DNA of 64,000 nucleotides, from positions 1-64,000 of IMG/VR virus record IMGVR_UViG_3300027710_000011. One strand, given 5' to 3'. Under the pieces are notes generated by a model. The model was not told the DNA's origin, did no database searches, and saw only the letters and a program-made list of their open reading frames with translations. This document shows positions 1,113-52,077 of the stretch, one piece after another; positions within the stretch are counted from its first letter, which is position 1; each line of letters opens with the position of its first letter. A program made the position numbers and the translations under genes.

Positions 1113-1118
1113 TCGGCT

Positions 1119-1162: not shown

Positions 1163-1176
1163 AGCTTTTTCTTATT

Positions 1177-1398: not shown

Positions 1399-1583
1399 GT
1401 CAACCGCACCCTCAGCAACTGCAAGCCTGGTTGGCACGGTGTCGGATGAACTTGGCTAAGTTTCGCGCAATACGTCATACACTGACTGAAGAACAACAAG
1501 TTCAGTTCGTTAATGACCAACAGGTGATTCTTAGAACAAGCGTCAGAGTTGTAAAAGGCCTTGCTCGGTTCGAAGGCGTGTAA
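1395..1583 (+). CDS. hypothetical protein (62 aa)
   Basis: AGGAG Shine-Dalgarno (SD) upstream and an ATGA overlap with the previous gene. Confidence 0.65.
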   Translation: MSQPHPQQLQAWLARCRMNLAKFRAIRHTLTEEQQVQFVNDQQVILRTSVRVVKGLARFEGV

Positions 1584-1600
1584 CTATCCAGGAGTGCATC

Positions 1601-2149: not shown

Positions 2150-2176
2150 CACCTTCTGAGCAGGAAAGAAAACGAG

Positions 2177-5100: not shown

Positions 5101-6577
5101 CGACGGTACCTGGGCAGCGGCTGTGGCTACGTCGAGCACATCGTTGAACGGCACTGCTGCACCGAGCGCTCGTTCGTCCAGCACAAGCGGTGTGTTTGCC
5201 GGTACCATCGGTTATCCGTTGATCACGATGACTGCGTCTGGCGCAGGCGCGAATGCTAAGAGTGCCCAGATTTATCTGGACTCCACTACTGGTGCTTTCG
5301 GCATGTCGTTCTTGCCGGACGGCTTGGCTTCGCAAAATCTGTTCTTCACCGCATCGCGCAACGGCGCAACTGCCGCAACGATCACCTTGACTTCTACAGC
5401 CATGAATTTGGCTGTTGGCACTGGTGGTCTGCAGCTGAACGGCTCTGCCGGCACAGCTGGTCAAGTGTTGACTTCCAATGGTCCTAGCGCCGCCCCTACG
5501 TGGGCTGCTCCTGCTCCAGCTGTCTTGGCTGCCACTGGCAACTACGCGACAGTTCTGACCTCGGGCGTCTACGCTGGTTTGCGCACTAACGCTCCTGCTC
5601 TTCAGTTGGTGAATACCAGCTGTGCAACCGATGCGGAAGTGACATCGCTTGTGCACGACAATGACGGCGTTGTTCGTCTGCGTCTGTGGGCCAACAACTT
5701 CGCATCGAACAACTACGCGTTCGAAGTGGTGCGTAACGGCGCAGCAGTGCCGTCGATGTTCAAGTTGTATGGCACCGCCATCAATTTGGCTGTTGGCACT
5801 GGTGGTCTGCAGCTGAATGGCGTTGCTGGCACAGCTGGTCAAGTCCTGATGTCTGGCGGCGCTGGCGTTGCTCCGACATGGTCGAGCACGTATGCAGGTC
5901 AGATGACATTCTCTGCTGGCATCACATGCTCGTCTGTGACTGCAATGGAAGTCGCTGGCGCCTCTGGCGCTCTGCAGCTCGGTTACCTGAATGCAGCAGT
6001 GACTTCGGTGCAAGATGCATTTGTGGCTTGGGGTGGTACTTCCAGTACTCTGGTGTCCGGCGTCACAGGTGCCAGCTCCAACGGTACTCTGGTGCTGTCT
6101 TCGCGTAACACATCCAACGCGGGTGTCACTATCGCGACTAACAATACTGTTCGACTGGTCACTCAGTTCAACGGTACGGTTCGTCCTGGTGCTGATGCGA
6201 CGCAGGACTTCGGCGCTACGACCTTCCGCTGGAACAACGGCTACTTCGGTGCCCTGTTCACAACAGCCGGTACCGTCAGCGTCTCGGATGAGCGTCTGAA
6301 GACCGACATCTTCGATCTGGAAGATGCTGAAGTGCGCGTGGCCCAGCAACTCAAGCAGTTGCTGAAGAAGTATCGTCTGAAGTCGGAAGTTGCGGCTCAA
6401 GGCGCGAAGGCCAAGTGGCACGTTGGCATCATTGCGCAAGCAGTGGTCAAGGCATTCGCAGATGAAGGTCTGGATGCTCACGACTACGCGATGCTCAGCC
6501 TGACTGATGTTGATGGTGTTGATCAATACGGCGTGAACTACGACGAATTGCTCGCATTCATCATCGCTGCTCTGTGA
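2177..6577 (+). CDS. long tail fibre (Mtd_N-like N-terminus, internal repeats, C-terminal peptidase S74 chaperone)
   Basis: N-terminal RGG...GPAGSIVVNTDAKTIHVHDGVTAGG, a G/S/T-rich body and C-terminal SDERLKTDI...GIIAQ...YGVNYDEL. Confidence 0.88.
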   Translation: MHTPLIPPRGGASTVASYVGPAGSIVVNTDAKTIHVHDGVTAGGFALSKVGHQHTLNEITAALGFTPAALNVSGQVSVAQLGTGTANATKVLFGDGTWKDAPTGGGGGSSNSLSGTGTVSPSTSVSGVYAGVTAGVGEMYLVNAGAGSNEKAIQFAQRADGVFQINLYNDALNSNPTFFSLDRTGAVPNIATFNVNSMVVNGVLSANSFAGVGTALTALNASNLASGTVPVARLGSGTASASTYLRGDGTWDAISAGGSVEAGSILPAAGTSSVTLTTGNQIGANTSADVTIGSGSSANGLTGAVTITSGGTGSLGSGNVTLKSGQTGSGYGSGEVIIGTGATSGNSGTPAVSGAITIATGGWTGTGTNQSSGSITLQTGTKAGSGVGGDINLTTGTGGEIVMTSSVITTTGNLGVGGFGGNGATPGRIFAASGGIQVDQTSLVPSNSLGGSFRIGYLNSAISGTSDGFLTWMGAAATLNVSGANGSVLLASRSDSGTAGVSVATNNTARLFIAGNGAWGLSGANYGTAGQVLTSSGSGSAPTWTSPAVDTLNATGPRGFNIATAAVTAGTSNDGTYQIPCIGLTAPNAPLNEKVWQFSASSGGGFELGGYNDALQGGSYSAYITIGRNAVAANTMQFNAAAITLNGAVTGTSFAGSGAGLTALNASNFSTGVMATARLGSGTADASTYLRGDGTWAAVSAGASTSLSATATSPAPSGTSGTTGVYASSVGGQPTFWFTNSTAAANTKTSVIDQTSGGLLRFNFTNDLWNTATAWLSAQRVSGSNVASAVKLDANSVNLAGLSTGLQLNGSAGTAGQVLTSQGASAAPIWTSASVTALNGTGTFTPSTTTTGVFAGAAGAESRIVFSASGATAGNKLSILAGHSGGFQASFVNDTYDSQTVWLQVARSGNTATNITLTGTAITLNAAVTGTSFAGTHTGVGTGLTALNASNLASGTVATARLGTGTADNSTYLRGDGTWAAAVATSSTSLNGTAAPSARSSSTSGVFAGTIGYPLITMTASGAGANAKSAQIYLDSTTGAFGMSFLPDGLASQNLFFTASRNGATAATITLTSTAMNLAVGTGGLQLNGSAGTAGQVLTSNGPSAAPTWAAPAPAVLAATGNYATVLTSGVYAGLRTNAPALQLVNTSCATDAEVTSLVHDNDGVVRLRLWANNFASNNYAFEVVRNGAAVPSMFKLYGTAINLAVGTGGLQLNGVAGTAGQVLMSGGAGVAPTWSSTYAGQMTFSAGITCSSVTAMEVAGASGALQLGYLNAAVTSVQDAFVAWGGTSSTLVSGVTGASSNGTLVLSSRNTSNAGVTIATNNTVRLVTQFNGTVRPGADATQDFGATTFRWNNGYFGALFTTAGTVSVSDERLKTDIFDLEDAEVRVAQQLKQLLKKYRLKSEVAAQGAKAKWHVGIIAQAVVKAFADEGLDAHDYAMLSLTDVDGVDQYGVNYDELLAFIIAAL

Positions 6578-14080: not shown

Positions 14081-17000
14081 TTGTTATCGAGATCGCTCAA
14101 ACGTTGAAGGATTCTCTCCATCGTTTGTTTCATCGATAGCAATTCAGACTGCGTGTCTGATAACTGACGTTTTGTTTCTTGTAGTTCATCCATCAACTCT
14201 TGCTGAGACTTAACGATCAGGGGAACAAGTTTGGAGTTATCAACTCCCCACATGCCGGTGATGCCGTCAAACTCAGTGTAGTCTGGAGAACCCACATGAA
14301 CAGCCCACGGCGTAGAACCAACCAGTTCTTGCGCAATGAAACCAAACGTGCAATGTTCCCCACCGTTCTTGAAGTTAAACGATCGAACAACGATAGAGCG
14401 CAAGATGTCTTGTGCCCGAGGTGAGTCGATGATGTTTTCCTTCGCCCGCTTATCGGACGTTGTATTGAACGATGCACTGGAACCGGTGAACGTAATGGAG
14501 CCTGCCAGATTACCTGTCGTGGTACTGACCAAGCGCAAACCGTATGCTTGCGAAGTAGTCTTTGCTTGCGCGTAGAAACAATAGTCAGTTCCATTGGAGG
14601 TACTACCTATTGCTTGAACGCGGTCGACGTAATCACCAGAATTAGTGACGTGTCCACCGAAGATTGTGCAAGCATTGGGCGATATCCAAAGGCATTCGTT
14701 CCAGTTACTGTTCTTATAACTTACGACCTGCAACCCCCCGCTGTTTTCTTGCAACAGCAGATTAGTTGCATTAGTGGCATTCCCAAGCTGAATGTTCGCA
14801 CCCTGACCGATGCCGAAACTACCAGCACCAGTTCTGGAAATGATCACATCTGCATTAGAGTTAGCAGTTGTATTACCGCTAAACCACGCCAGATTGGAAC
14901 CACCACTCATTCCAATGACATTCAAACGAGCACTGGATACCGCAGTATCACCACCTACGATTACACGGCCGCCTGCTCCAGATGTCTGCAAGTACATATC
15001 CGGATTTGTCTTAGAGAGCGCGCTCTCCATCCGAATCATCGTGTAATCGTTGTTAGAGCCAACACCACTAAATCCAGGACGAGTCGTGATGTCGAAGTAG
15101 TCGGCACCGCCATTCTGAGTCGTGACCGGACCGACCTTGATCTTCAGACCAGCGTACTTCTCAGCTGTGGTGATGCACAAAGCAGTCGTCATCGCTGAAA
15201 CAGAGGACGTCGTGGAAATGATGACTTGACCGTCAGTCATCGTTGCGCCAGTACTTTCACCGTGAACATACAAGTGAGCATTAGGTCCAATGGATAGATT
15301 ACCAGCATTAGTCAACGCCATTCTCGTAGACACGAGATTAGCACCGACTGTTGTAGAACCAGTGGTTGTACTACCCCACTGGAAACTATTGGCGGCCTCT
15401 GCCCATCCGCGATACTGACCGGTCGTTCGGTTGTACGAACGCATCTGGATGAAATCCACAACGGGGTCAGGATCTACTTCAAATCCAACACCAGCAGGAA
15501 CTGTGCTGTGTGTAACGTTGAATACCGAGACTGGATTCATTGCATTCACACCGGTATTACCGTTGGACTTTACAATGAAACGACTATTCTGTCCAGCTGA
15601 CCCAGTAGCACCTGGAGCCAGAATAATCGAAGACGGAGTGTTTGTATCCGTCCAATCCTGTTCAGCCTGTATTGTAATTTGTCCCGCAGCTACGTATTGT
15701 GTTCCAGTGTAACCGTGAACATTGAAGAAAGCAAGCGCGTTAGTCGCCAGAATCTTGGTAGGAACAGCAAACGTACCGTTAGCGCGCCGGCCAGTGAAAC
15801 CACCGTATTCGCCAAACGCATCCATCATGACGCGAATGCGCTCGCCGTCATTGCCAATAGCGTGAACGCGATGAGTAGGATTTACCGTGTTGATACCGAA
15901 CATTCCACCAGGAATCAGACAAGCGCCAACGGCCGAAGGAAGACCGTCTGCGTTTGTACCTGCTCTGAAGATCAACTTTCCTGGATTAACTGCTGAACCA
16001 CCGCCGACAAAATCAATCTGCCCACCACGCGCTCCACCGGCAGCTTGTGCCGCGCCCCCTGAGATAGAGATCGTACCGCCTGATGATCCAAAAACCAATG
16101 CAGGTACAGTCGATGGAGTATTGGATTGCAAGTAGATCACACCTTCGCCAGACGGATACGTGTTACCGCCAACCATGGTCAAGCGCGCTGAATCACTAGC
16201 TGTGCCAATCAATACGTTTTGCTGATTGGTAATGCGTACCGCCGGCACATATTGCACAGAGTTCACTTTGGCCGTGGAGAAAATCAATTCACCTGGTGTT
16301 GAAGTAGAGGTTTGAACACCTGAAGCTCTGGCCTCAATCCCAGCAAGATTAGTGTTTAAGTCCGTACCATTACCAGCGCAGAACTGAATCGCACCAACGA
16401 TATCCTGATCTTGAAGAAGAATATTAGAACCAATACCTGTTCCCCTACTCTTACCTAGCGCCAACACTGCGGCATGTATGTCATCAGAGTTACGAACAAT
16501 CGCCAATGAAGCTTGATTGTTAGCATTCTCAATATGCACAAGACGAGTAGCGCCACCAACCGATCTCGATTTACCACCAAATGTCATCCCTGCATTCGAC
16601 AGAGAGAACAACTCGTTATAAGTCAAGTTGTTGCGCGCAGTTGCAGCGGCTGCAAAAGAAAACGACAAACGACCTTGACCGCCTACGTTTAGATCGTGAG
16701 AGATTCTCCAGGACGAAACGTTTGTCGCATTGGCTTGCGAGTTCAGCTCCAGTTTAGCGCCGCTGGCAGCATTGAAAGCGCCGAGGAAAGCACCCTCGAA
16801 GTTCGTTGTGTTTGAAGCAACGTAGATTTCATTGATAGTCGAAGATCCAACTTCACCGATATTCAAGTTAGCTTGGAGAATGCTGTTCTCACCCAAACCT
16901 ACTTGACCCGTGGTATTGATCTTCAAGGCTGTTCGCTGAGTACTGGCATTCAGTACCTTAAGACGCCACAGACCTTGTGGTTGATACCACGACTGTTGAA

Positions 17001-27146: not shown

Positions 27147-27845
27147 TTACGCAGCTTTGTTACCACCTATCGAATCAATGACGAACTCGATAGGTTCTTT
27201 AGACGGCATCAAGATGTACTCGCCATACGTCGTGTAGTACGGAGGTTTTTTATCCTTGTAACTAGGATCAACTTCGTACAACGCGTAACAGAGCTCAAGA
27301 CTGATGTCTAAAAGACGGTTCTTGTATTTGGCCGGATCAAGAGTAGCAATGATCTTGCCATAACTGGATGCCGTGCCTTCGTGATGTGTGAAAGACAAAG
27401 CTCGCTTAGTGACGTGAGTAAACTTGTCACCAGGCTTACCATTGACGTTGAGTTTGCCGTACCAGGTTTTATCCGCAGTAAGCATGTTGTCTTCGTCAAT
27501 CTCGCTGACATCGAAGCCACGGTAGAGTTTCGGATGCATTTTCGGTTTTTGAATTGCCGAAAACACACGCCGTGCTTCTTCCAGTTTTGGAACCAAATCT
27601 TGATCTGGAGTGAAGATCCAGTCGTCGATTACCTTGAGGAGTTCAGGATGCTTGCACATCTTCTCCACGATCCTCATATCGACGTCTTCTTGATCAAACG
27701 TCAATTTGGGGATGTAGGCAACCATGCCGAGGATTTTGATCAAAACTTTTCGACCAATCGAATCATTTCGATCCTTCATCTCCATGACTTTTTCCATTGC
27801 AATTTGCTGTTGCAACAGAGCTTGTTGAATGATGATGTTAGTCAC
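27147..27845 (-). CDS. putative ADP-ribosyltransferase (R-S-E clade) with A-x-E propeptide
   Basis: KLYRG, ALSFT and YGEYIL motifs in the ART order, plus N-terminal QQIAME. Confidence 0.62.
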   Translation of the reverse strand: MTNIIIQQALLQQQIAMEKVMEMKDRNDSIGRKVLIKILGMVAYIPKLTFDQEDVDMRIVEKMCKHPELLKVIDDWIFTPDQDLVPKLEEARRVFSAIQKPKMHPKLYRGFDVSEIDEDNMLTADKTWYGKLNVNGKPGDKFTHVTKRALSFTHHEGTASSYGKIIATLDPAKYKNRLLDISLELCYALYEVDPSYKDKKPPYYTTYGEYILMPSKEPIEFVIDSIGGNKAA

Positions 27846-27848
27846 TTC

Positions 27849-29582
27849 TTACTCCGCACTAGAAACAACTGACTTCTGCAACCACATCAGCAAAGCCTCG
27901 GCGACCTGACTACTCGCATACCGGAATGTAGATTCCAGAACGTAAATAGGATCTATGTACTGATCGCTGAGGGTGCCGATTTTAAAAAGCGCTGTCTCAT
28001 ACATCGGGCAATCTATCTTAGCATGCGCAAAAAGATAGTCGGGAGATGCACACTGCTTGTTAGTTTCAGGCCAACCGTCCTGAGGACGCGGGTAGTAGGT
28101 AACTTGCTGTTGGGCTGGATGGAAAACACCACCTCCTGAAGACATGGTTACTTCAAGAAACTTAATGATCAGCTTTGCAACTTCTTTGGCTTGAGCAGCT
28201 GTGAGCGCTGGGACTTGAGCATCAACTTTAGGCGGCTTTGCTTCCAGCTTAAAGTAATAATCTCCGTCCCACACGTCGTACTTGTCATTCACAGAGTAGA
28301 CGAGACCACCTACCATGTTTTTGCTGTTGGGCAATTTGTTCCACAACGCTTCTGCAGGATGGTGCAAAGCACGCAGCTTCTTTTCCATATCCTCAAACAA
28401 CGAAGCAGCTTCCAGCGTCTGATACTTCACAGCCCAATCTGTGTAAGCTTCATTGCCGCTAGGTTCAGGCGGTGTTCGCTGGCACAAAGCTTCCACCGGA
28501 GCTACGATTGTTTGAACTTGCTTGACAAACGAAACGTAGGCATTGAAGAGCGTAGTTTCAGTCCGCGCAATGATTGCGAGTGTGTCGTTGATAGTTTCAA
28601 TCGGATTGGGATTGAACTTACCATTTACGGAAAGCCACTTCGCAATCTCAGTGCCAGCGATATCACCTGTCTTGAAGGTCTGCTTAGAAACCCAAGCATC
28701 GTTCAAGAAGGTATTCTTCAACGTCCTGACGACCTTGTGAATTTCTTCGTCGAAAATGTCGAGATCCTTGTTCTTGTCCTTAACGTAGGCTTTCCACTTG
28801 TCGTGACCCCACATGAAGAGGTTAGCCACTCCAATCAAAGCTAAGAAACCAAAACCAAGTTTCTCACCAGTTGAAAAAGTAACTGTTGTTGTAGCTTCTT
28901 GCGCAATAGACAAGTGTTCCAATGCCAGCACGGCGTCAGCATCAAACTTGTTCTTCGTGATGAAGTACTTGTCGAAGTACTCCGTGATCTTCTTGCGCTC
29001 ACTCGAATCCGTGGTGTCGCCCTTGATGCAGGACTTCACTTGAATCGGCAATTCAGGAATCTCAGCATCCATGCTCTTGACTTCCAGATCGATCTTGGCC
29101 ACCGGATGGTAACCGCCTTCTGGATTCACGAACATGTCGACTTCAAAGACCAAGTCGCCCACAGGGAAGTGATAGCGATGCTTGATCATGCCGGACTCGC
29201 TCAGCATAGCGAACAGATTGAACGCATCAACTGTTGTCGGAACAGGCACTTCCAGACGACGACCAACGCCTTGATCCACCTTGGTGTTCAAGACGTACTG
29301 AGGCTCGCCTTCAGGCCTTTGATCAGCACCTGCCTTGGGATCGCCTTTGACGATCTGGCGAATACGCAAAGCACCCTTAGCGGCATTCTTAGAACTCTTG
29401 CCGATCTTGATGTTCCATTGCTCTTGCAGATCCATTGATTCAGCATTCTTCAACTGTTCGAAGTCTTCGATCTCGACGTAGAACTCATGCTCATGTTCTT
29501 TGAACGTCTTACCGTCTTGAACATCTTGTTCCAAGGCAATCTGAGCGTTTGCCTTTTTGATCATTTCAAAAATGAGTTTCAC
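27849..29582 (-). CDS. CYTH/triphosphate-tunnel domain fused to a second domain; putative internal head protein
   Basis: GTG start with GGAG SD. CYTH pattern EHEHEF...QEQW...LRIR...KHRYHF...FEVDMF...KIDLEV, ALE/AQE motifs and a hydrophobic helix after the junction. Confidence 0.68.
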   Translation of the reverse strand: MKLIFEMIKKANAQIALEQDVQDGKTFKEHEHEFYVEIEDFEQLKNAESMDLQEQWNIKIGKSSKNAAKGALRIRQIVKGDPKAGADQRPEGEPQYVLNTKVDQGVGRRLEVPVPTTVDAFNLFAMLSESGMIKHRYHFPVGDLVFEVDMFVNPEGGYHPVAKIDLEVKSMDAEIPELPIQVKSCIKGDTTDSSERKKITEYFDKYFITKNKFDADAVLALEHLSIAQEATTTVTFSTGEKLGFGFLALIGVANLFMWGHDKWKAYVKDKNKDLDIFDEEIHKVVRTLKNTFLNDAWVSKQTFKTGDIAGTEIAKWLSVNGKFNPNPIETINDTLAIIARTETTLFNAYVSFVKQVQTIVAPVEALCQRTPPEPSGNEAYTDWAVKYQTLEAASLFEDMEKKLRALHHPAEALWNKLPNSKNMVGGLVYSVNDKYDVWDGDYYFKLEAKPPKVDAQVPALTAAQAKEVAKLIIKFLEVTMSSGGGVFHPAQQQVTYYPRPQDGWPETNKQCASPDYLFAHAKIDCPMYETALFKIGTLSDQYIDPIYVLESTFRYASSQVAEALLMWLQKSVVSSAE

Positions 29583-42724: not shown

Positions 42725-42756
42725 ATAAAAGGAGGCCCGAAGGCCTCCTTTTATGC
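42725..42756 (-). terminator. terminator of capsid gene
   Basis: AAAAGGAGGCC-TTCG-GGCCTCCTTTTAT on the minus strand (UUCG loop). Confidence 0.85.
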
Positions 42757-42795
42757 TGTTCACCCAAGCAAGCCCGAAGGCTTGTGCTGGATTAC

Positions 42796-44949
42796 TTAGA
42801 TGACGTGATTGTGGATCGCGACCTTCTTGTCGATCACATCTTCCCAGCCCTTGATCGTGATCACGGCCATGATAGGCATGTTCGTGATGTGACGGAAGGC
42901 CGGTTGCACGGTCAGTTCCTTGCTGTTCGCACCGTTGCGGTGGATCGGCAGAGCCAACACCAGCTCAGGCTGATAAGCCATGTTGCCGAAGTTCAGCACG
43001 TTCGGGACGCCTTCCGAAGCATTGGGAGCCTTCAGAGTCATCACGATCTTGCCGTTCATCAGCTTGTTGGGAGTGGAAACCACTTCCAACGACATGCCTT
43101 CACCCAGAGTGCGCATGTCGCCAGTGACCATCAGCCAGCCTTCGGTCACTTGGTCGGTACCGGCCAAGACGATCGGGTCCACGTCGTTGCCGCCGTTCAG
43201 AGCAGCAGCGGCTTGACGCCAGCCGGAGTCACGCACCATGCGATACGACATTTCGCGCATCTTGTTGGTGATGGCTTGCTGGATGTCTTCAGCCAGGTTG
43301 TGCGACTGGATGTTGTTGACGATGGTGCCCAGATCCAGCTCGAACTCTTCGTAGAACGGAGTGATCAAGTGACGCGACACGCCCAGGATGTCCAGGGTAT
43401 CGCCGATCAGGCCTTGCGAACCAACGTAGCGGCTCAGCACGTCCTTGACGCGCAGCAGCTCGTCCACGGCGCCGTTGCTGGCGCGGATGCGAGTGGTGGT
43501 GATCAGAGCGTTCAGGTCGCTGGTGTCGGTGTCATCGCCTTGGCCCAGAGGACGGGGAGCGGTGATAGGCGACAGCAGAGGCACCGAGTAGCACTGGTTG
43601 TACACCGTGATGTCCAGCAGGTCGCCACGCTGACGACGGTTGCTGTTGGTACGACGAGCGTCGATGTTGTAGCCGATCAGCTTGGCGTCGACGAAGGCAG
43701 CGAAGATGGCCTGGATGCCAGCCGGATTGGACGCACCGGGAACGTACTTCACGCCGTTCTGGGTCACCGAAGTCACGGTCACTTCACCAGCCAACAGATT
43801 CATGGTGCCGGTCTGCAGATCCAGCGAACCCGAAACCATGAAGCCCAGACGCACTTCCACGCCGGGAACCACGCCAGCCAGTTCGCCCGGCTTGGCGCCG
43901 TCGATAGCCAGGGTGCTCGAAGTCACCATCACCGACTTGTTTTCGAAGTTCAGGGTGACGCGCTTTTCCGAACCTTGCGGGTTGTAGACGAAGTTCGAAG
44001 TGAACAGGTCCTTGGTCGGGAAGTAGATCACGTCGCCAGTTGCGTCCTTCAGTTGCAAGTAGGCGCCGGCCAGGTGCACGTCACGGTCCACAGCGTCGGT
44101 CGAGTCCATCAGGCCAGATTGCACCAGCGAGTCGACTTGCGACAGGCCGATCAGGCTCATCTGCTGGCCGAACTTCAGAGCGCCGGTGACCACGGCTTCG
44201 CCGTTCTGGTCCACGGTGCTGTGCGGGATGATGGCGCTGTCGACGAACTTGTTGGCAGCTTCGTTGCGGAACACCGGGATGATCGTGGTCTGGTTGTTGC
44301 GCAGGATGTCGGGATCGCGCAGAGCGAACACGATGTTGCGACGCTTGAAGTCGTTCACGTCGCCGGAGGTGGCGCGACGCACTTCGTCCATGACGCTGAT
44401 CAGTTGGATCGAGATCAAGTAGCCGACCTGGTCACGAGTCACCACCACGGTGGGGTAGAAGGCTTCGCCGAACTTGTCTTGCTGAGCCGCTTGCATGTTG
44501 TACGTCACTGTGTACGCAGACATGTTGCGGTTCGATGCGTCGTCGTAGGCTTCCATGGCGGTAGCCAGGCGCTCGACGCCGCCAGCAGCAGCGATCATCA
44601 CGTTGTTGCCATCTTGCGGCAGGCTCGGAGCCTTGCCACCCAGGTAGCTCTTGCCAGCTTGAGCGATCATGGCGGCGCCCAGAGCGGCGTCACGACGAGC
44701 GGGAGTCAGCTTGCCCAGGCCGGAGTCGTTGGCGTAGCCTTCCAGAGCAACACGCAGACGATCCAAGCCGCCGCCGAAGGACTCTTGTTCGGAGTCGTTC
44801 ATGCTTTCCAGAGCGATGCCGGAGCGCACGCCAGCGATCAACGAGGTGCCGCCGTTGGACTGCGCTTCGTTCTTGACAGCGTTCAGGAGACCAGACAGAC
44901 CAGTAGCCGGGATGCGACCAGCCAGGAGACGTTGAACTGCATTTTTCAT
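42796..44949 (-). CDS. major capsid protein (phiKZ gp120-like)
   Basis: YNMQAAQQDKFGEAFYPTV, ARRTNSNRRQRG and KELTVQP motifs; propeptide with ALE/ALE/AME sites; strong codon bias. Start placed at ATG 44949. Confidence 0.88.
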   Translation of the reverse strand: MKNAVQRLLAGRIPATGLSGLLNAVKNEAQSNGGTSLIAGVRSGIALESMNDSEQESFGGGLDRLRVALEGYANDSGLGKLTPARRDAALGAAMIAQAGKSYLGGKAPSLPQDGNNVMIAAAGGVERLATAMEAYDDASNRNMSAYTVTYNMQAAQQDKFGEAFYPTVVVTRDQVGYLISIQLISVMDEVRRATSGDVNDFKRRNIVFALRDPDILRNNQTTIIPVFRNEAANKFVDSAIIPHSTVDQNGEAVVTGALKFGQQMSLIGLSQVDSLVQSGLMDSTDAVDRDVHLAGAYLQLKDATGDVIYFPTKDLFTSNFVYNPQGSEKRVTLNFENKSVMVTSSTLAIDGAKPGELAGVVPGVEVRLGFMVSGSLDLQTGTMNLLAGEVTVTSVTQNGVKYVPGASNPAGIQAIFAAFVDAKLIGYNIDARRTNSNRRQRGDLLDITVYNQCYSVPLLSPITAPRPLGQGDDTDTSDLNALITTTRIRASNGAVDELLRVKDVLSRYVGSQGLIGDTLDILGVSRHLITPFYEEFELDLGTIVNNIQSHNLAEDIQQAITNKMREMSYRMVRDSGWRQAAAALNGGNDVDPIVLAGTDQVTEGWLMVTGDMRTLGEGMSLEVVSTPNKLMNGKIVMTLKAPNASEGVPNVLNFGNMAYQPELVLALPIHRNGANSKELTVQPAFRHITNMPIMAVITIKGWEDVIDKKVAIHNHVI

Positions 44950-44999
44950 GATTTGGTTTTCCGTAGAAGAAAGAGAAAAGAATGACAATCGGAATTGGT

Positions 45000-45611
45000 T
45001 TAGGCCACCGCTACCTTACGGCGCAGAAGCGTTCGAAGATACAAGCCATAAACGAAGCTCTCGGCGACCTTCGTTGGTTGCTCATAAACATATAGCTGTT
45101 TCACGATCTCGCGAACCAGCTGATATTCTAATTCACGCACGTCACTCACCTTGGCGATGGTGTTGTACAGAATCACTCCGACGGCTTGATCTCGCAATGC
45201 GACGACTTCAAAGCCGCGAGCAGGATCAGACTTGGAGATAGACACATCCGTTTGGCTTGATGCGTCTTCAGAATATAGGCGTCTTTTCAGTTCATCAAAC
45301 GCTTCAGGTTGCAAGGCCAACTTGCTTTCCAAAGTATTGGTGACTGCAATTGATTCTTGGGTGTTGTTGTCCGTGAACCACCAACTACCAAAGATGTTGT
45401 CGCTCTTGTGCTGACGAGAAGGGAAGAGATCCAATCCCAATTTGTGAATGCACAAAAGATCCGTCAGGTCGTTCTGAGACAGAACTTGGCTGGCCTTCTG
45501 GTAATCCAGAAGATCACACATCTTCATGTTCTTGCGACGGATCGTACTTGCCACCCAATAAGGGATGGCGTAAATGCGCCGACGCATCGGAAAAAGCAGT
45601 TTCATTTCCAT
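45000..45611 (-). CDS. conserved hypothetical protein upstream of major capsid gene
   Basis: 203-aa ORF between the capsid and DnaB genes, as in phiKZ-like phages. Confidence 0.68.
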   Translation of the reverse strand: MEMKLLFPMRRRIYAIPYWVASTIRRKNMKMCDLLDYQKASQVLSQNDLTDLLCIHKLGLDLFPSRQHKSDNIFGSWWFTDNNTQESIAVTNTLESKLALQPEAFDELKRRLYSEDASSQTDVSISKSDPARGFEVVALRDQAVGVILYNTIAKVSDVRELEYQLVREIVKQLYVYEQPTKVAESFVYGLYLRTLLRRKVAVA

Positions 45612-45738: not shown

Positions 45739-47280
45739 ATGGACAAAAAAATACTTCTCATTAAGGGTGTTACGCTGTTGTTTCGTGAGAGTCAAATTCC
45801 GAACAACGCTGACAACTCAGCGGCGCTGGTTAAAACACTCTTGGAGGGCGTAACGCTCCCAGACGTAAGTGTTGGTGCCATTGACACCGAACGAGAGATC
45901 CTAGGGGCTCTCAAGCAGATTTGTCTTGAGATGTGTGGACAATCGCCTACACATCAATACGTTGCAGTTGAACTGCTACAAAAGATTCACCACGCCACAC
46001 GGCATGACGAAACTCTATACCATACGTTTCGTGAAGGTATCGAAACTCAGTTGTCAGAAGATGAGCTCAAACGCTTTTGTCTGAATCTGGAAGCTGACGT
46101 TAACGAACATGTCCGTGAAGAAAAGATCAGTAAGCTGATTCTTGATGCAGGAATGCAGCTCAAGTTCAAGCGCGATACCGTTGGCAATATGCAAAGCTTT
46201 GCTGCCGACATCGTTCAAAAGCTTGAGCCTTATAGCGTCAGTGCAAGTAAGGAAGATCCTGGTGTTGTTGGTACGGTTGACTTCGGCAACCGTGAACAGA
46301 TGAACCAGATGATCGAAGAGGGTAAGACCCTGAACAGTTCTGAAGGTATTCTTCGTTTGGGTTGGCAAGGTGTCAACCGAATGACTGAAGGTGGTCTGCG
46401 CCGCGGCGAGTTCGTCACAGTGGCGGCCTTGCAACATAACTTCAAGACCGGTTTCTCTATAAATCTGTTCGAGCATATTGCGATGTATAACACACCGCAC
46501 ATGATCAACGTAATGAAGCGTCCGTTGTTGCTTCGGATCACGTTTGAAGATCCGTTGTCTACCAACATGACTTACATGTATCGCAACATCTACGAGAACA
46601 AAACTCGTCAGATGGCCGACGTGATGGGTACACCGACTGCGGAAATGACAGAGTACGTTTATAACGCTCTGACTGCAACGGGTTATGAGATCATGATGAT
46701 GCACGTTAATCCGTCCGAGTGGACGTATCGACACATCACAAACAAGGTCTTGGAACTTGAAGCCCAGGGCTATGAGATCCATGTTCTGGCATTGGACTAT
46801 CTGGCCATGGTTCCTACAACAGGTTGCCGTGTGACCGGTCCTACTGGTTCAGACATCCGAGATATGTTCCGTCGTATGCGTAACTTCTGTGGTCCTCGCA
46901 AGATCACCTGCATCACGCCTCACCAGTTGTCGACTGAAGCCAAGAAGTTGACACGGATGGGTAACGAAGAGAACTTCGTCAAGGACGTGGCTAACAAGGG
47001 TTACTACGATAGCTGTTCTACCATTGACCAAGAGATCGATCTGGAACTCTACATCCACATCGTGAAGGCCGATGGTGCATCCTACTTGACAGTACAGCGC
47101 GGTAAGCACCGTGGCTTCAACCGTACGCCTGAAGCTCACAAGTTCTGCGTGTTGAAGTTTGAAGACGTTGGCGACATCATCCATGACGTTGACGGTGTTG
47201 ATCTGACTCGCAAGCGTCCAGGCGGTGGGCCAATGGGTAGTCCGGATGAGAAACCTCATTGGGACTTTTCCATCGATTAA
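45739..47280 (+). CDS. dnaB: DnaB-like replicative helicase (phiKZ gp118-like)
   Basis: GLRRGE...ALQHNFKTG (variant Walker A), ITFED, LDYL, TPHQLS and QRGKHR. Confidence 0.88.
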   Translation: MDKKILLIKGVTLLFRESQIPNNADNSAALVKTLLEGVTLPDVSVGAIDTEREILGALKQICLEMCGQSPTHQYVAVELLQKIHHATRHDETLYHTFREGIETQLSEDELKRFCLNLEADVNEHVREEKISKLILDAGMQLKFKRDTVGNMQSFAADIVQKLEPYSVSASKEDPGVVGTVDFGNREQMNQMIEEGKTLNSSEGILRLGWQGVNRMTEGGLRRGEFVTVAALQHNFKTGFSINLFEHIAMYNTPHMINVMKRPLLLRITFEDPLSTNMTYMYRNIYENKTRQMADVMGTPTAEMTEYVYNALTATGYEIMMMHVNPSEWTYRHITNKVLELEAQGYEIHVLALDYLAMVPTTGCRVTGPTGSDIRDMFRRMRNFCGPRKITCITPHQLSTEAKKLTRMGNEENFVKDVANKGYYDSCSTIDQEIDLELYIHIVKADGASYLTVQRGKHRGFNRTPEAHKFCVLKFEDVGDIIHDVDGVDLTRKRPGGGPMGSPDEKPHWDFSID

Positions 47281-49033: not shown

Positions 49034-50209
49034 TTACTTGTTCAGCTTGTCCAGGATCAGGACGAGAGTCTTGGTGAGACTCTTGTTCGTTTCCAGGAGT
49101 TCAGCGTTAACCTTGCGGGTTTCACGAACTTCACGTTGCACAGCTTGGTTGAAACTGTGAACGGTTTCCAATTTCTGGTGGAGTTCGCGATTGTCAACGA
49201 CAAGTGCTTCGATCATTTCAGTCAGGTGATCAACACGACCTTCGTTGTGATCACCTTGGCTTTCGATCTCTTGCAACTGACGCTGAGTGTCACGATTTCC
49301 GACCGCGATCGCATCCAACACTTGCGAGTGAAGGCTGTATGCGTTATCACGCGGCGCACGGTCATGGTTAGTGCCGTACTGATTGGTAGGCTTTTCGGCC
49401 TTGTTCTTCTTTACTTCTTTTTCTTTGACCTCAACCTTAGGTTTGGTCTTGGTCTTGGTTTCAGGCTGAGGTTCGGGCACCACGTCGTAAACAAGCGGAC
49501 CGCCAATGTCGGCCAGCTTGAGAACCAACTCAGCACTCATCTGTCCAACCAGACGATACTTCATCACCGCCTTTTCGCCTTCGATCTGATACGAGATAGA
49601 GATCAGCCCACTGACAATGGGGCCGGTCGCTTTCTTCGCATTCGTGATCAAACGGCTGCCGACAGAGATGTAACGCAGGCCCTTGGTCAGGAGCGTTGTC
49701 ACATCGCCAACTTGTGCGATGTAGTCGCGCAGTTTGGCCAAGTTCTTCATATCGCCTTCATCGCGAATCGCAGTATTGTCACCGACGGAGTCAAGAACGG
49801 TGAGGAATTCGTGCGTTTCTTCGGCGAGCAGCTCGATCACTGCTTTGGTTTCTTCGACACCGATAGGGGAACCGGAAGTGAAGTTGCCGTGTTTATGAAG
49901 CCAGTCGCTGCCTTCATTAGCGATGTAGAACTCATAGGTGTCATCGTTATTTGCACGACGATTGACAACAAGGTTCAAGCTTTCATGAGACGTAAAAGCT
50001 TTGTGGGTCGGATTGGTGGGTGCCTGAGATTCGGGTTGCTCAATCACCGGGTCGGCAGCGTCAGCGACCGCGTCGTCGCTGTTGCTTGCTTGCTGGGTGG
50101 ATGCATCAGCGACAGCTTCGGCTGGAGGCGCAATGAGTTCCGGGGTAGGAACTTGTTGTGCTTCAGCTTCGATGACAGCAGCTGCGCTTTGAGTGTTCAG
50201 ATCGTACAT
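49034..50209 (-). CDS. hypothetical protein (acidic disordered N-terminus, Lys-rich linker, C-terminal coiled coil)
   Basis: GGAG SD; 391-aa ORF. Confidence 0.75.
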   Translation of the reverse strand: MYDLNTQSAAAVIEAEAQQVPTPELIAPPAEAVADASTQQASNSDDAVADAADPVIEQPESQAPTNPTHKAFTSHESLNLVVNRRANNDDTYEFYIANEGSDWLHKHGNFTSGSPIGVEETKAVIELLAEETHEFLTVLDSVGDNTAIRDEGDMKNLAKLRDYIAQVGDVTTLLTKGLRYISVGSRLITNAKKATGPIVSGLISISYQIEGEKAVMKYRLVGQMSAELVLKLADIGGPLVYDVVPEPQPETKTKTKPKVEVKEKEVKKNKAEKPTNQYGTNHDRAPRDNAYSLHSQVLDAIAVGNRDTQRQLQEIESQGDHNEGRVDHLTEMIEALVVDNRELHQKLETVHSFNQAVQREVRETRKVNAELLETNKSLTKTLVLILDKLNK

Positions 50210-50430
50210 TCTAGTGACTCCGTTAAAATCGTATTTGTTGTTCTATTACAAATACGTCTTGTTTACCAAAGCTCGTGGGTTGTTCACAAACTTTGATCCC
50301 CTTTTTACGTGCGAATACTTACTACTGTATCTGACGTAATTCTCTTTACATTGCCTTTCGCATACTTTTTTGAGCACGCTCAGACATAGGACTTTACAAG
50401 CTGGTATTTTTTACCATCTTTCAAGGGACA

Positions 50431-51380
50431 GCATAAGGGGAGTAGGAGGCGCCCAGCCTCCTACTCCCGATAGCCGGGTCATCGCTGACCCTAAGTGTGG
50501 GTGAGCTAGGGTGGTCAACCAAAAAACCACCGTAACTCACGCCCCTTCCACACTCCTCACAATGCTGTCTGCTCCGACATTTCTATCAGGCACTGGGTCA
50601 GCTCCCCAGCTCATTGTAAGATCAGATTCGCCGAACCTGACTTTCGCTCTTGTTGAGGCTACTCCAGAACTCACCTCAGTTTAATGCTCCGCCATCTGGA
50701 TTGAGCATTTTTCTCTTACCGTATTGCGTGTACGAACCGAACAAACTCCTACAATACAATACGTGAGAAAACGGCGCACCAATGACTTCAGCGAGTCTAG
50801 TGCGCCTTCATTGAAGACGTATACTGGGGGTAGCCCAGCACACGTCGTCAACGTATGAACAGCATAGACAACGAACACTCAACTCCCCGAAAGGAGTCGA
50901 GCATTCGCTTCTATACTGTTTAATGATAATCCTAGGTCACCATCCAAGTCGCCAAGCCGTTGCGTACAGCCTGGTTTGAGCGCCCTCCACAAGAGCCAGT
51001 GTTGCTGGCAATCATGCTTTCAGGTGACTAAGGGCTATCATCGTCTAGTCCTCCGCGCTTCACAGATCTTGGGATTGTTAAGCCCGCTTTCGGGGGCGCC
51101 CTTAATCTCCACGCGATGGCGCTATCTTTCAGATAACTTGCTAGTTAAGATGTCACCTTAACTAACCTGATGCGGCATGGGTTGACAACCCACCCTAGAG
51201 CCAACTTTCGTCGGCCCCATTCAACTATCATGTGTTTACGCTTTCGCGCTATGATAGTGCCTAAGGCATCACTCTTGGCCACTGATGAATTACTCCAAGC
51301 CGGAGCCTATTCCATCAGGTGATCTTCTTCACACGATCGTCTTGCACGTAAAAACTTGCATTACAACCAGCGATTCCACG
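50431..51380 (-). ncRNA. putative ~950-nt highly structured large non-coding RNA
   Basis: Largest gene-free gap in the window. It has a promoter motif at 51384-51408, a terminator at 50432-50468, and more than 15 helices with GAAA/GCGA/UUCG loops and G-U pairs that form only on the minus strand. Confidence 0.8.
50432..50468 (-). terminator. terminator of the large ncRNA
   Basis: Minus strand GGGAGTAGGAGGC-TGGGC-GCCTCCTACTCCC-CTTATGC; same hairpin+TTATG type as the other terminators. Confidence 0.75.
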
Positions 51381-51383
51381 TTT

Positions 51384-51408
51384 GTGATATGTGGCTGTGC
51401 AAATCTAG
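51384..51408 (-). promoter_or_regulatory. early-type promoter motif driving the large ncRNA
   Basis: Minus strand CTAG-N12-ACATATCAC; the core is identical to the 42666 and 62835 copies. Confidence 0.7.
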
Positions 51409-51409
51409 A

Positions 51410-52018
51410 TTACAGCTCAAGCCACTTCTGCAGCTGATGCAATTGATATTCAGCAATTGCATCAATGTGCTCACCTTGTAATCTTTGCGCCACAATCTGT
51501 TCTGGACCAGCCATATCCAATAACCGGACAACGCTGATATAGAAGTAACTACCAAAACTCTTGCGCTGCGCTTCAGAGAAGTGACCTGATATCAACAAGA
51601 CCGCCTTGGTGTTCTTGTCGTAGAAACAACCTTCCCACAACGGAATGTCTTCCGATTCAGGAGATATGTTGTAATTGAACCACGCAGTAGCAACGTTATC
51701 GTTCTCTACGTGGATTCCTAATGAATTGTGGAATGATTCAAATAAAACCACTCCCACCCGTTGTTCATTTTGACAAGTAAGCAGGTCGTTATGACAAGTA
51801 AACAAATATTTAGTTACATCCTGAATCGCGTCTTCTCGCATCTCCGCTATAAAAACTTGTTTGTGCACGATCTGTAGTTTTGCCTTTCTGTTCTTATCAC
51901 AGCCCATTGAACGAGCTTCTTGCTTGAAGACGTCAGTCACAATGTCTTCAAGCATACTGCTAATGACTTGGCGTAATTTGCGATGTTGTATTCTGAACAT
52001 CTCTTTAAGAATTGTCAT
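51410..52018 (-). CDS. hypothetical protein (202 aa)
   Basis: AAGGAG SD; ORF track. Confidence 0.72.
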   Translation of the reverse strand: MTILKEMFRIQHRKLRQVISSMLEDIVTDVFKQEARSMGCDKNRKAKLQIVHKQVFIAEMREDAIQDVTKYLFTCHNDLLTCQNEQRVGVVLFESFHNSLGIHVENDNVATAWFNYNISPESEDIPLWEGCFYDKNTKAVLLISGHFSEAQRKSFGSYFYISVVRLLDMAGPEQIVAQRLQGEHIDAIAEYQLHQLQKWLEL

Positions 52019-52040
52019 ATCGATCTCCTTTGTGAAATAA

Positions 52041-52077
52041 ATAAAAGAGAGGAGGGGAAACCCTCCTCTCTTTATGC
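52041..52077 (-). terminator. hairpin terminator
   Basis: AAAGAGAGGAGGG-GAAA-CCCTCCTCTCTTT, overlapping the stop codon. Confidence 0.78.

What the first reader, a model, noticed from the sequence alone, without database searches (positions are those of the whole stretch)
50431..51408. Stand-alone ~950-nt highly structured non-coding RNA gene in a phiKZ-like phage
Seen: this is the largest gap with no credible gene in a tightly packed window. On the minus strand it begins just after a full promoter motif (CTAG-N12-ACATATCAC, 51384-51408) and ends at a standard hairpin+TTATG terminator (50432-50468). Read as RNA it is almost continuous helices, including UGGGGCCGAC-GAAA-GUUGGCUCUA, ACUAUCAU/GCGC-GAAA-GCGU/AUGAUAGU, GUUAGUUAAGG/UCUUAACUAGC, GUUAUCU/AGAUAGC, CCAGGCUGU/ACGGCUUGG, GACGUGUGCUGGG/CCCAGUAUACGUC, GGCGCACUA/UGGUGCGCC and GGGUCA-GCGA-UGACCC. 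A 29-bp UUCG-capped helix at 50858-50920 contains six G-U wobbles. These G-U pairs would be A-C mismatches on the plus strand, and the GNRA/UUCG loops read correctly on the minus strand, so selection appears to act on one RNA strand. Nested long-range pairings (CAAGAGU/GCUCUUG, UGAUGC/GCAUCA, UCAGGU/ACCUGA) suggest multi-branch domains. Established: large structured phage-associated RNAs of this size class exist (GOLLD, ROOL). I do not recognise tmRNA, RNase P, or group I/II intron signatures here. Inference: an early-expressed large RNA of possibly new class, such as a scaffold, decoy or ribozyme.
Basis: partly seen in the sequence, partly recalled or inferred. Interest (0 to 1): 0.93.

Follow-up and report, generated by a model that had tools for sequence, protein, structure and literature searches.

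The report
Two structured jumbo-phage RNA genes
The 1.2-kb gene-free gap in this phiKZ-like jumbo phage is a real, conserved, non-coding RNA locus, but it looks like two back-to-back structured RNAs, one of them a new ~320-nt family shared by at least ten uncultivated phages, and their function is still unknown.

Summary
Window 50210-51409 has no credible ORF. The minus strand folds far better than shuffles (z -10.3), better than the plus strand and better than coding controls. No Rfam family, tRNA or tmRNA matches.

Related metagenomic jumbo-phage contigs show that the region is modular.

- **Unit B** (about 50436-50762, minus strand) is a ~320-nt RNA present in 10 distinct phage sequences. 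Its 152-nt core has two hairpins with complementary loops, a variable hairpin, and a three-way junction carrying an almost invariant hairpin and a GNRA hairpin. Covariation is strong: 88% of cells paired against 33-47% in slid controls, and 33 of 38 pairs changed on both sides.
- **Unit A** (about 50867-51392) is a ~520-nt structured RNA found only in the window's own lineage (4 sequences). A phiKZ-type terminator and a second terminator-like hairpin with a U-tract separate it from unit B.

The flanking proteins are orphans and diverge much faster than the RNA.

My reading is two trans-acting phage ncRNAs, at least one of a new family. A role as a protein-binding scaffold or decoy is only inferred. 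A single GOLLD-like RNA or a self-assembling RNA is not excluded. No transcript data exist.

The parts
51384..51408 (-). Promoter-like motif CTAG-N12-ACATATCAC in front of unit A
   Evidence: The motif is enriched in the window: 6 matches against 1.23 expected. It is conserved in L116 and L120, and in L003 as ATATATCAC. In L116 it directly follows a terminator, so it heads its own transcription unit. Promoter function is inferred.
50867..51392 (-). Unit A: ~520-nt structured non-coding RNA, specific to this lineage
   Evidence: z = -9.6 on the minus strand against -3.9 on the plus strand. Homologs occur only in L116 (88% nt over the gap), L120 (69%) and L003/L004 (54%). The RNAalifold consensus has 116 pairs. 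Of its cells, 90% are paired against 36-42% in slid controls, and 39 pairs changed on both sides against 1-10. The structure was derived from the same alignment, so this is weaker evidence than for unit B.
50925..51075 (-). Better conserved 3' half of unit A: blocks CAAGAKCUKUGA and GACUARACGAUGRUAGCCC, plus a long-range helix closing a multi-hairpin domain
   Evidence: The window/L003 consensus has 55 pairs, none broken, and 14 changed on both sides. The long-range helix is kept in 4 sequences with A-U/G-U and U-A/U-G exchanges.
50859..50925 (-). Terminator T1: 29-bp UUCG hairpin whose 3' arm carries CTATGCTGT
   Evidence: 29 bp with 6 G-U pairs. The stem sequence is replaced almost entirely in L116, L120 and L003 yet still pairs, and GTCTATGCTGTT is conserved. 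It fits the phiKZ terminator motif. Termination here is inferred.
50766..50846 (-). Spacer with two hairpins (50816-50846 and 50773-50806), the second followed by GUUUUCU
   Evidence: Both helices verified. L003 and L120 have different stem sequences followed by U-rich tracts at the same place. This is typical of an intrinsic terminator or attenuator.
50750..50761 (-). Conserved element TATTGTATTGTA at the 5' edge of unit B (probable promoter or 5' end)
   Evidence: Unique in the window. Identical in L003, L116, L120, L094 and L095. The other clade has CAC..TA.ACTTATGTA at the same place. Its pairing context differs between phages, so it is conserved as sequence rather than as a helix. Its role is inferred.
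50436..50762 (-). Unit B: ~320-nt structured RNA, member of a new family found in 10 distinct jumbo-phage sequences
   Evidence: z = -7.8 (minus) against -4.2 (plus). nhmmer and covariance-model hits in L003, L005/L006, L088, L089, L090, L094, L095, L116 and L120.
50556..50708 (-). Unit B core (model R1/R2). H1 50703-50707/50685-50689; H2 50673-50677/50655-50659; H3 50634-50640/50622-50628; junction stem Hx 50612-50620/50556-50564; H4 50605-50609/50593-50597; GNRA hairpin H5 50584-50589/50574-50579
   Evidence: 107-115 bits in the window. On 10 sequences 88.2% of cells pair, against 66.1% shuffled (0 of 500 shuffles reach it) and 33-47% slid. 33 of 38 pairs changed on both sides. Covariation score 0.736 against at most 0.167. 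In the manual helix table 321 of 335 cells pair.
50663..50700 (-). Complementary loops of H1 (UCCAGA, 50695-50700) and H2 (UCUGGA, 50663-50668): loop-loop (kissing) pairing
   Evidence: The six-base complementarity is present in all sequences. The sixth pair is A-U in the window, L094 and L095, and by eye also in L116 and L120. It is U-A in L003, L006, L088, L089 and L090. Whether the pairing is within one molecule or between molecules is not known.
50476..50555 (-). Unit B 3' part: long hairpin H6 (about 50493-50555) with conserved base GGGGCG and, in most members, apical U-GUGGUUG; small hairpin H7 (50476-50491)
   Evidence: A long hairpin of variable length and sequence sits at this place in all 8 sequences inspected. 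Helix GGGUCA/UGACCC verified.
50428..50468 (-). Terminator T2: 13-bp G+C-rich hairpin followed by CTTATGCTGT
   Evidence: The same hairpin-plus-motif ends unit B in every homolog. It fits the phiKZ terminator motif.
50210..50427 (-). Leader of the 391-aa gene, with an A-rich stretch and a conserved TATGT (50384-50388) resembling the phiKZ late-promoter core TATG
   Evidence: Conserved in all W-type loci, and as ..CCTTATGTGG in the other clade. TATG with G as +1 is the phiKZ late-promoter core (PMC4666361). Function is inferred.

Best explanation
**What is shown.**
- The gap is a non-coding RNA locus read on the minus strand.
- Its 3' part (unit B, ~320 nt) belongs to a new, conserved, compactly folded RNA family.
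- Unit B has two adjacent hairpins with complementary loops, an A-rich linker and a variable hairpin. A three-way junction holds a near-invariant hairpin (CUGGG-AGYUGA-CCCAG) and a 6-bp GNRA hairpin. A long variable hairpin and a phiKZ-type terminator follow.
- Its 5' part (unit A, ~520 nt) is a second structured RNA restricted to the window's lineage.

**What is inferred.**
- The two units are separate transcripts made by the phage's own RNA polymerases.
- Unit A would run from the ACATATCAC-type promoter to terminator T1.
- Unit B would run from the conserved TATTGTATTGTA element to terminator T2.
- Both act in trans and not as leaders of a particular gene.

**Most likely mode of action (inferred, low certainty).** Unit B folds into a defined tertiary structure. 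Its invariant loops would bind a protein partner from the host or the phage. It would then work as a scaffold or decoy during infection, in a genome region otherwise filled with fast-evolving host-takeover-type orphan genes.
For: **Non-coding and structured.**

**No known family.**

**Unit B is a family with a conserved structure.**
- Model hits of 98-148 bits in 10 distinct sequences.
- Covariation: 88.2% paired against 33-47% slid, 33 of 38 pairs changed on both sides, score 0.736 against at most 0.167, and 0 of 500 shuffles reach the observed values.
- The H5 stem differs in nearly every lineage yet always closes a GNRA loop.
- The loop-loop pair flips between A-U and U-A.

**Modularity.**
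- Unit B stands alone between terminator-type hairpins in L005/L006, L088 and L089. In L090 only the downstream terminator is seen, because unit B starts right after the upstream gene.
- In L094 and L095 unit B also occurs without unit A, in its own intergenic gap.
- Unit A is found only in the window, L116, L120 and L003.
- T1 carries the conserved terminator motif, and a second hairpin with a U-tract follows it.

**Selection on the RNA rather than its neighbours.**
- The gap is 88, 69 and 54% identical at nucleotide level to L116, L120 and L003.
- The adjacent 391-aa protein is only 61, 42 and 28% identical.
- The upstream 202-aa ORF is an orphan insertion absent from L116.

**Not tied to one gene.** The downstream genes differ and are unrelated between clades.
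Against: - No transcript data exist for this uncultivated phage. The promoters, the 3' ends and the number of RNAs are therefore inferred from motifs and from phiKZ literature.
- phiKZ-type terminators can be read through (PMC10914365), so a long A+B transcript may also exist.
- Unit A evidence is weaker. A structure predicted from the window sequence alone is not kept in relatives better than slid controls. The MAFFT alignment of its 5' half is poor.
- The family is narrow. It is absent from about 80 other helicase-anchored jumbo-phage loci, from the 41.5-kb helicase-centred stretch of Ralstonia phage RP12, from IMG/VR apart from the window itself, and from isolate phages.
- Nothing tested here points to a specific partner or activity. 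The scaffold or decoy role is a guess from the architecture and the genomic context.
Confidence: 0.6

Rival explanations
1. One large (~950-nt) RNA. The internal hairpins would be structural or leaky, and units A and B would act together. This would resemble GOLLD, which has a variable 5' region and a conserved 3' region.
For: A and B are adjacent and co-oriented in all four W-type lineages. [quoted passage not shown] L094 has another ~980-nt structured gap (z = -9.0 against -4.2) one gene upstream of its unit B.
Against: Unit B occurs without unit A in six lineages. T1 has the full conserved terminator motif and is followed by a second terminator-like hairpin with a U-tract. A conserved sequence element marks the start of unit B. 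No long-range A-B pairing was seen in the centroid fold of the window beyond weak outer helices.
Confidence: 0.25
2. Self-assembling RNA. The complementary H1 and H2 loops would pair between molecules. Unit B, alone or with unit A, would form dimers, rings or cages, as ROOL, GOLLD and phi29 pRNA do.
For: The two loops are perfectly complementary over 6 nt and covary. Covarying kissing loops in ROOL and GOLLD turned out to be intermolecular (PMC12286853). tRNA genes lie within about 1-2 kb in L006 and L088, as is often the case for ROOL and GOLLD. The GNRA loop and the A-rich linker could provide A-minor contacts.
Against: The hairpins are adjacent and could kiss within one molecule. No match to the ROOL, GOLLD or pRNA models. 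No tRNA in the window. Nothing here measures oligomeric state.
Confidence: 0.12
3. Cis-acting leader or attenuator system that controls transcription into the downstream gene.
For: phiKZ produces many 5'UTR-derived short RNAs by premature termination (PMC10914365). The locus is full of terminator hairpins and lies upstream of a gene on the same strand.
Against: The downstream gene is a 391-aa protein in W-type phages. It is an unrelated ~127-aa protein in one clade and a ~111-116-aa protein in L094 and L095. A strong terminator and a separate conserved TATG-type element lie between unit B and the gene. 320-520 nt with a multi-helix conserved core is far more than an attenuator needs.
Confidence: 0.08
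4. A ribozyme or a degenerate self-splicing intron.
For: The features are typical of catalytic RNAs: a compact multi-helix junction, a GNRA loop, a loop-loop contact and invariant single-stranded nucleotides. A block in unit A of L003 (ACAGACUAAACG) resembles, from my memory, the R element of group I introns. That is a lead only.
Against: No group I, group II, RNase P or small-ribozyme model matches even at E up to 10. The flanks are unrelated orphan genes and not halves of one gene. In L116 the locus follows a terminator. The R-like block is not followed by a conserved P7 partner.
Confidence: 0.05
5. A DNA-level element, such as a replication origin or packaging site, rather than an RNA.
For: It is a large gene-free region a few kb from the replicative helicase gene.
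Against: No direct repeats or iterons. The stability is strand-asymmetric, with 51 G-U pairs on the minus strand against 25 on the plus strand. Covariation keeps G-U intermediates. The region is bounded by transcription signals.
Confidence: 0.03

Closest known systems
GOLLD RNA (Rfam RF01998)
   Same: It is phage-encoded, large and ornate. It has a conserved 3' part and a variable or optional 5' part. It shows covarying loop-loop contacts. tRNA genes lie nearby in some relatives (L006, L088). Its function is unknown.
   Different: No match to the GOLLD model at gathering score or at E up to 10. The two parts are separated by terminator-type hairpins, and the 3' part exists alone. The hosts are nucleus-forming phiKZ-like phages. 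No tRNA occurs in the window.
ROOL RNA (Rfam RF03087)
   Same: A phage-borne structured RNA of several hundred nucleotides with kissing loops and no known protein partner.
   Different: No model match. The architecture is different. Unit B is about half the size.
phiKZ non-coding RNAs (Gerovac 2021, PMC8545117; Putzeys 2024, PMC10914365)
   Same: They come from the same virus group. They are bounded by the same hairpin-plus-TTAT terminator motif and lie between small genes.
   Different: Those RNAs are 70-210 nt, have one or two stem-loops, and derive from UTRs. Here the core is a conserved multi-junction structure of 150 nt within a ~320-nt RNA, plus a 520-nt partner. There is no sequence similarity to any isolate phage.
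phi29 pRNA (Rfam RF00044)
   Same: A phage RNA with two loops complementary to each other.
   Different: In pRNA the loops pair between molecules to build a ring on the packaging motor. Here the mode of pairing is unknown. phiKZ-like phages are not known to use a packaging RNA. No model match.
Riboswitch or ribozyme-like compact folds in general
   Same: Loop-loop contact, a GNRA hairpin of fixed length, an A-rich linker and invariant junction nucleotides.
   Different: The unit has its own transcription signals and no constant downstream gene. No ligand or catalytic motif was recognised.

Membership tests
GOLLD RNA | Match to the family covariance model (RF01998) | tested here: not met
   No hit at gathering score in the window or in 7 homolog loci. 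No hit at E up to 10 on the region.
GOLLD RNA | Conserved 3' region with a less conserved 5' region | tested here: met
   Unit B occurs in 10 sequences and unit A only in 4. This is a resemblance in layout, not homology.
GOLLD / ROOL RNA | Frequent location next to tRNA genes | tested here: inconclusive
   No tRNA in the 64-kb window. tRNA genes lie about 0.8-1.7 kb upstream in L006 and L088.
GOLLD / ROOL RNA | RNA-only homo-oligomeric cage | not testable with these tools
   Needs native gels or cryo-EM.
ROOL RNA | Match to the family covariance model (RF03087) | tested here: not met
Group I / group II intron | Match to the intron models, and interruption of a host gene | tested here: not met
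   No Rfam hit at E up to 10. The flanking ORFs are unrelated orphans. The 202-aa ORF is absent in L116, where the locus follows a terminator.
tmRNA / RNase P RNA / tRNA | Detection by ARAGORN or by Rfam models | tested here: not met
phi29-type pRNA | Match to RF00044 | tested here: not met
phi29-type pRNA | Two mutually complementary loops | tested here: met
   UCCAGA and UCUGGA, covarying. Whether the pairing is in cis or in trans is unknown.
phiKZ-type intrinsic terminator | G+C-rich hairpin followed by YTTATKYYGT (PMC10914365) | tested here: met
   50428-50468 (CTTATGCTGT) and 50859-50925 (CTATGCTGT). The same motif occurs at other gene ends in the window. Termination itself was not measured.
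Riboswitch / cis-regulatory leader | Constant association with a downstream gene or pathway | tested here: not met
   The downstream genes are unrelated between clades. A terminator and a separate promoter-like element intervene.
New unit B family (this report) | 152-nt core H1/H2 (complementary loops)-H3-Hx[H4,H5], scoring with model R2 | tested here: met
   Window 50556-50708 scores 114.6 bits, E = 2e-32. Covariation.

The most novel reading that the evidence does not exclude
Unit B, alone or with lineage-specific partners such as unit A, could be a new class of ornate RNA of nucleus-forming jumbo phages that acts by itself. One possibility is a homo-oligomer built through its complementary loops, like ROOL and GOLLD. 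Another is a ribozyme or small-molecule-binding RNA used in host takeover or counter-defence.
Probability: 0.15. Interest if true: 0.85.

Novelty: new variant of a known kind. Interest (0 to 1): 0.62.

Why it matters
- Structured RNAs of several hundred nucleotides with strong covariation are rare, and most known classes turned out to have unusual biology.
- In the literature I searched, the only non-coding RNAs described for nucleus-forming phiKZ-like phages are short and UTR-derived.
- Here a complex RNA stays conserved inside a block of orphan genes that otherwise turns over very fast. This implies a function the phage cannot easily lose.
- Unit B now has a covariance model, a testable secondary structure and a specific loop-loop contact.
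- Chemical probing, oligomer assays and pull-downs can therefore start from synthetic RNA even though the phages are uncultivated.

Tried and rejected
1. **Known RNA families.** Rfam at gathering score on the window and on 7 homolog loci, and at E up to 10 on the region and two homologs, gave only hairpin noise and two tRNAs in relatives. ARAGORN found nothing.
2. **Isolate phages.** blastn of the gap and of the L089 unit B against 50,697 phage records gave no match. The 41.5-kb helicase-centred stretch of Ralstonia phage RP12 gave no model hit, although it has an unannotated gap of roughly 750 nt by my reading (940 nt as annotated).
3. **Pattern scans.** Two patterns on IMG/VR returned only the window's own contig. 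One pattern on genome contigs gave 19 chance matches, none confirmed by the model.
4. **Wider distribution.** Models R1 and R2 over about 90 jumbo-phage loci found nothing beyond the clade. Model R3 for unit A found only the window and L003; L116 and L120 had not been fetched yet and were found later by alignment.
5. **Coding potential.** Six-frame comparison with homologs gave only short patchy matches in all frames.
6. **Origin-like repeats.** None.
7. **Hairpin plus TATGCTGT as a late promoter.** I first thought so because one copy seemed to precede the capsid gene. I withdrew this. The capsid gene is on the other strand, and that hairpin is a bidirectional terminator.
8. **Group I intron idea.** It came from an R-like block in unit A and was rejected (see rivals).
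9. **Neighbouring proteins.** PHROGs and Pfam gave no informative hits. The 202-aa protein has no relative among 5.8 billion proteins. One search with the full 391-aa protein timed out.
10. **Other structured gaps.** The gaps in L094, L095, L005 and L088 show no sequence similarity to unit A.
Full report
**Source and setting.** The window is positions 1-64000 of the 276,772-bp contig IMGVR_UViG_3300027710_000011. It is a phiKZ-like, nucleus-forming jumbo phage. Its nearest isolates are Ralstonia phages RP12 and RP31 and Burkholderia phage FLC9, at about 41-53% protein identity. The finding lies about 3 kb from the DnaB-like helicase gene (45739-47280). It sits at the start of a long run of small minus-strand genes with no family assignment.

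- Between the genes 49034-50209 and 51410-52018 there are 1200 nt with no ORF above 65 aa.
The hairpin at 50858-50925 has 29 bp, a UUCG loop and 6 G-U pairs.
- The minus strand of 50431-51408 folds to -424.7 kcal/mol, against -320 for dinucleotide shuffles (z = -10.3). The plus strand reaches only -345.4 (z = -7.7).
- The minus-strand fold uses 51 G-U pairs and the plus-strand fold 25.
- Eight 500-nt coding pieces of the same window give z between -0.7 and -3.7. The piece 50431-50930 gives -10.2.
- There are no direct repeats, no tRNA or tmRNA and no Rfam match even at E up to 10.

**Transcription signals.**
- The motif CTAG-N12-ACATATCAC is enriched in the window: 6 matches against 1.23 expected. 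It mostly sits upstream of minus-strand genes.
- The hairpin plus TTATGCTGT at 50428-50468 fits the conserved phiKZ terminator, a hairpin followed by YTTATKYYGT (PMC10914365). The same motif ends other genes here.
- I first suspected this motif doubled as a late promoter, because TATG with G as +1 is the phiKZ late-promoter core (PMC4666361). I withdrew that. The copy at 42730-42760 lies downstream of the minus-strand capsid gene and is a bidirectional terminator.
- The 29-bp hairpin in the middle of the region carries the same terminator motif (CTATGCTGT, 50859-50867).
- It is followed by two more hairpins. The second (50773-50806) runs into GUUUUCU.

**Relatives.** No isolate phage matches the region, and IMG/VR holds only the window itself. 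I therefore used conserved proteins as anchors. Helicase homologs led to contigs from Logan, ENA, NCBI and JGI. Homologs of the adjacent 391-aa protein led to more.
- nhmmer found the whole region in L003/L004.
- nhmmer found only the 3' third in L005/L006, L088, L089 and L090.
- A covariance model of the shared core (R1) added L094 and L095.
- A rebuilt model (R2) found all ten distinct sequences at 98-148 bits. It found nothing among about 80 other jumbo-phage loci or in the RP12 stretch.
- L116 (identical to L117-L119 over the gap) and L120 carry the full window-type locus. Their nucleotide identity to the window over the whole gap is 88% and 69%. L003 is 54% identical.

**Unit B.** In the window it runs from about 50762 to 50436 on the minus strand. 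The 152-nt core (50556-50708) has these parts:
- H1, whose loop contains UCCAG.
- H2, whose loop contains CUGGA within GAGUNCUGGAGUA.
- A conserved A-rich linker.
- H3, a 7-bp hairpin.
- Hx, a 9-bp stem closing a three-way junction.
- H4, inside the junction (CUGGG-AGYUGA-CCCAG, nearly invariant).
- H5, also inside the junction, a 6-bp hairpin capped by GNRA.

Downstream lie a long hairpin of variable length (H6) with a conserved GGGGCG base, and then the terminator.

*Covariation in unit B.*
- On the model-made alignment of ten sequences, 88.2% of cells pair. The figures are 66.1% after shuffling partners (0 of 500 shuffles reach the observed value) and 33-47% when partners are slid by 1-3 columns.
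- 33 of 38 pairs have changes on both sides, against 7-15 in slid controls.
- The covariation score is 0.736 against at most 0.167. The eight-sequence version gave the same picture.
- Helix 1 scores low in that alignment (58% paired) only because the model misplaces it in several sequences. In the hand-curated table H1 pairs in 38 of 40 cells, and overall 321 of 335 cells pair.
- H5 has a different stem in nearly every lineage.
- Even the otherwise invariant H4 shows one U-A to C-G exchange, in L120.

*The loop-loop pairing.* The H1 and H2 loops are complementary over six bases in every sequence. The sixth pair is A-U in the window, L094 and L095, and by eye in L116 and L120. It is U-A in L003, L006, L088, L089 and L090. 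This supports a real loop-loop pairing. Whether it forms within or between molecules cannot be told from sequence.

**Unit B is an independent module.**
- In L005/L006, L088 and L089 it sits alone between a terminator-type hairpin and its own terminator. In L090 it starts directly after the upstream gene and ends at its own terminator.
- In L094 and L095 it also occurs without unit A, in its own intergenic gap.
- The gene downstream is an unrelated ~127-aa protein in that clade, a ~111-116-aa protein in L094 and L095, and the 391-aa protein in window-type phages.
- A conserved sequence marks its 5' edge. It is TATTGTATTGTA in the window, L003, L116, L120, L094 and L095, and CAC..TA.ACTTATGTA in the others.
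- This sequence is unique within the window. It is embedded in different local pairings in different phages. I therefore read it as a promoter or 5'-end signal. That reading is an inference.

**Unit A.** It spans about 51392 to 50867.
- It is as strongly and asymmetrically structured as unit B: z = -9.6 against -3.9, and in L003 -8.4 against -2.6.
- It is found only in the four window-type lineages.
- Its 3' half has conserved blocks and a long-range helix enclosing several hairpins. Between the window and L003 this gives 55 consensus pairs, none broken and 14 changed on both sides.
- With four sequences RNAalifold gives 116 pairs. Of the cells, 90% are paired against 36-42% slid, and 39 pairs changed on both sides against 1-10.
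- That structure was derived from the same alignment, which inflates the contrast.
- A structure predicted from the window alone is not kept better than slid controls. The 5' half aligns poorly.
- Unit A is therefore a conserved, structured RNA region, but its fold is only partly established.
- The stem of terminator T1 is almost completely rewritten between the window and L116 while still pairing, and the flanking motif is unchanged.

**Selection.**
- The RNA locus is more conserved than its neighbours. The adjacent 391-aa protein is 61%, 42% and 28% identical in L116, L120 and L003.
- The upstream 202-aa ORF has no relative among 5.8 billion proteins.
- That ORF is a 623-nt insertion in the window. 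It lies exactly between an upstream terminator (52044-52073) and the unit A promoter motif. L116 lacks it.
- No frame of the gap shows a conserved peptide.

**What it is and how it may work.**
- *Shown:* a non-coding locus under selection at the RNA level, with one new, well-supported RNA family (unit B) and one lineage-specific structured RNA (unit A).
- *Inferred:* two transcripts bounded by the motifs above, acting in trans.
- The architecture of unit B is that of a compact tertiary fold. It has a loop-loop contact, a fixed-length GNRA hairpin, an A-rich linker and invariant loop and junction bases.
- Such folds usually bind a partner or catalyse a reaction.
- Unit B is not tied to one gene and sits among fast-evolving small genes. 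I therefore favour a protein-binding scaffold or decoy role, with low certainty.

**Alternatives kept open.**
- One GOLLD-like RNA with a variable 5' and a conserved 3' region.
- A self-assembling RNA. The covarying kissing loops of ROOL and GOLLD proved to be intermolecular (PMC12286853).
- A cis-acting leader.
- A ribozyme.

A DNA-level element is unlikely.

**Comparison with what is known.**
- It is not a member of GOLLD, ROOL, pRNA, intron, tmRNA or RNase P families as far as their models can detect.
- The ncRNAs described for phiKZ are 70-210 nt, UTR-derived and simple (PMC8545117, PMC10914365).
- Full-text searches found no report of a large structured RNA in phiKZ-like phages.
- I rate it a new variant of a known kind: phage-borne ornate ncRNAs of unknown function.

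**Limits.**
- All homologs are uncultivated contigs.
- No expression data exist.
- E-values from the session's models are rough.
- The family may be wider than the plus or minus 10 kb around the anchors that I could search.

Noticed in passing
window 51410-52032: The 202-aa ORF just upstream of the RNA locus has no relative among 5.8 billion proteins. It is a 623-nt insertion relative to the closest relative, L116. It lies exactly between a terminator (52044-52073) and the unit A promoter motif.
   Followed up: partly
L094 16990-17967 (minus strand): Another ~980-nt gene-free stretch lies one gene upstream of that phage's unit B. It folds with z = -9.0 on the minus strand against -4.2 on the plus strand. 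It shows no sequence similarity to unit A and gives only a weak R3 hit (E = 3.2). It may be a further large structured RNA.
   Followed up: partly
L006 18535-18625 and L088 20415-20498 (minus strand): tRNA genes lie about 0.8-1.7 kb upstream of unit B on the same strand in two relatives. The window itself has none.
   Followed up: no
L116 10044-13167: The DnaB-like helicase gene of this close relative is called as two fragments with a 473-aa HNH_3 protein between them. This suggests a homing-endonuclease, intron or intein insertion. It explains why the helicase-anchored search missed this phage.
   Followed up: no
L096 (Ralstonia phage RP12) about 27830-28580: There is an unannotated gap in the syntenic minus-strand gene block of a cultured relative. 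It is 940 nt as annotated and roughly 750 nt by my reading of where ORF107 really ends. It ends with a hairpin plus CTTATGCCGC. The unit A and unit B models give no hit.
   Followed up: partly
window 42730-42760: Bidirectional phiKZ-type terminator downstream of the capsid gene. The same hairpin is followed by TTTTATGCTGT on the plus strand and by TTTTATTTTGT on the minus strand.
   Followed up: partly
window 43001-45000 and 1-6000: The major capsid gene region (60% G+C) and the first 6 kb (51-63%) are much richer in G+C than the rest of the window (about 48%). They carry long antisense ORFs as a result.
   Followed up: no
Contig of P0003 (Logan SRR26290409), locus coordinates 14397-15852: A third close relative (helicase 80% identical) has a 1.45-kb gap at the same place, with only one doubtful opposite-strand ORF called in it. 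The DNA could not be fetched.
   Followed up: no
window 50384-50388 and homologous sites: A conserved A-rich stretch plus TATGT lies about 50 nt downstream of the unit B terminator in all relatives (..CCTATGTCTGA or ..CCTTATGTGG). It is probably the promoter of the next gene, of the phiKZ late TATG type.
   Followed up: partly
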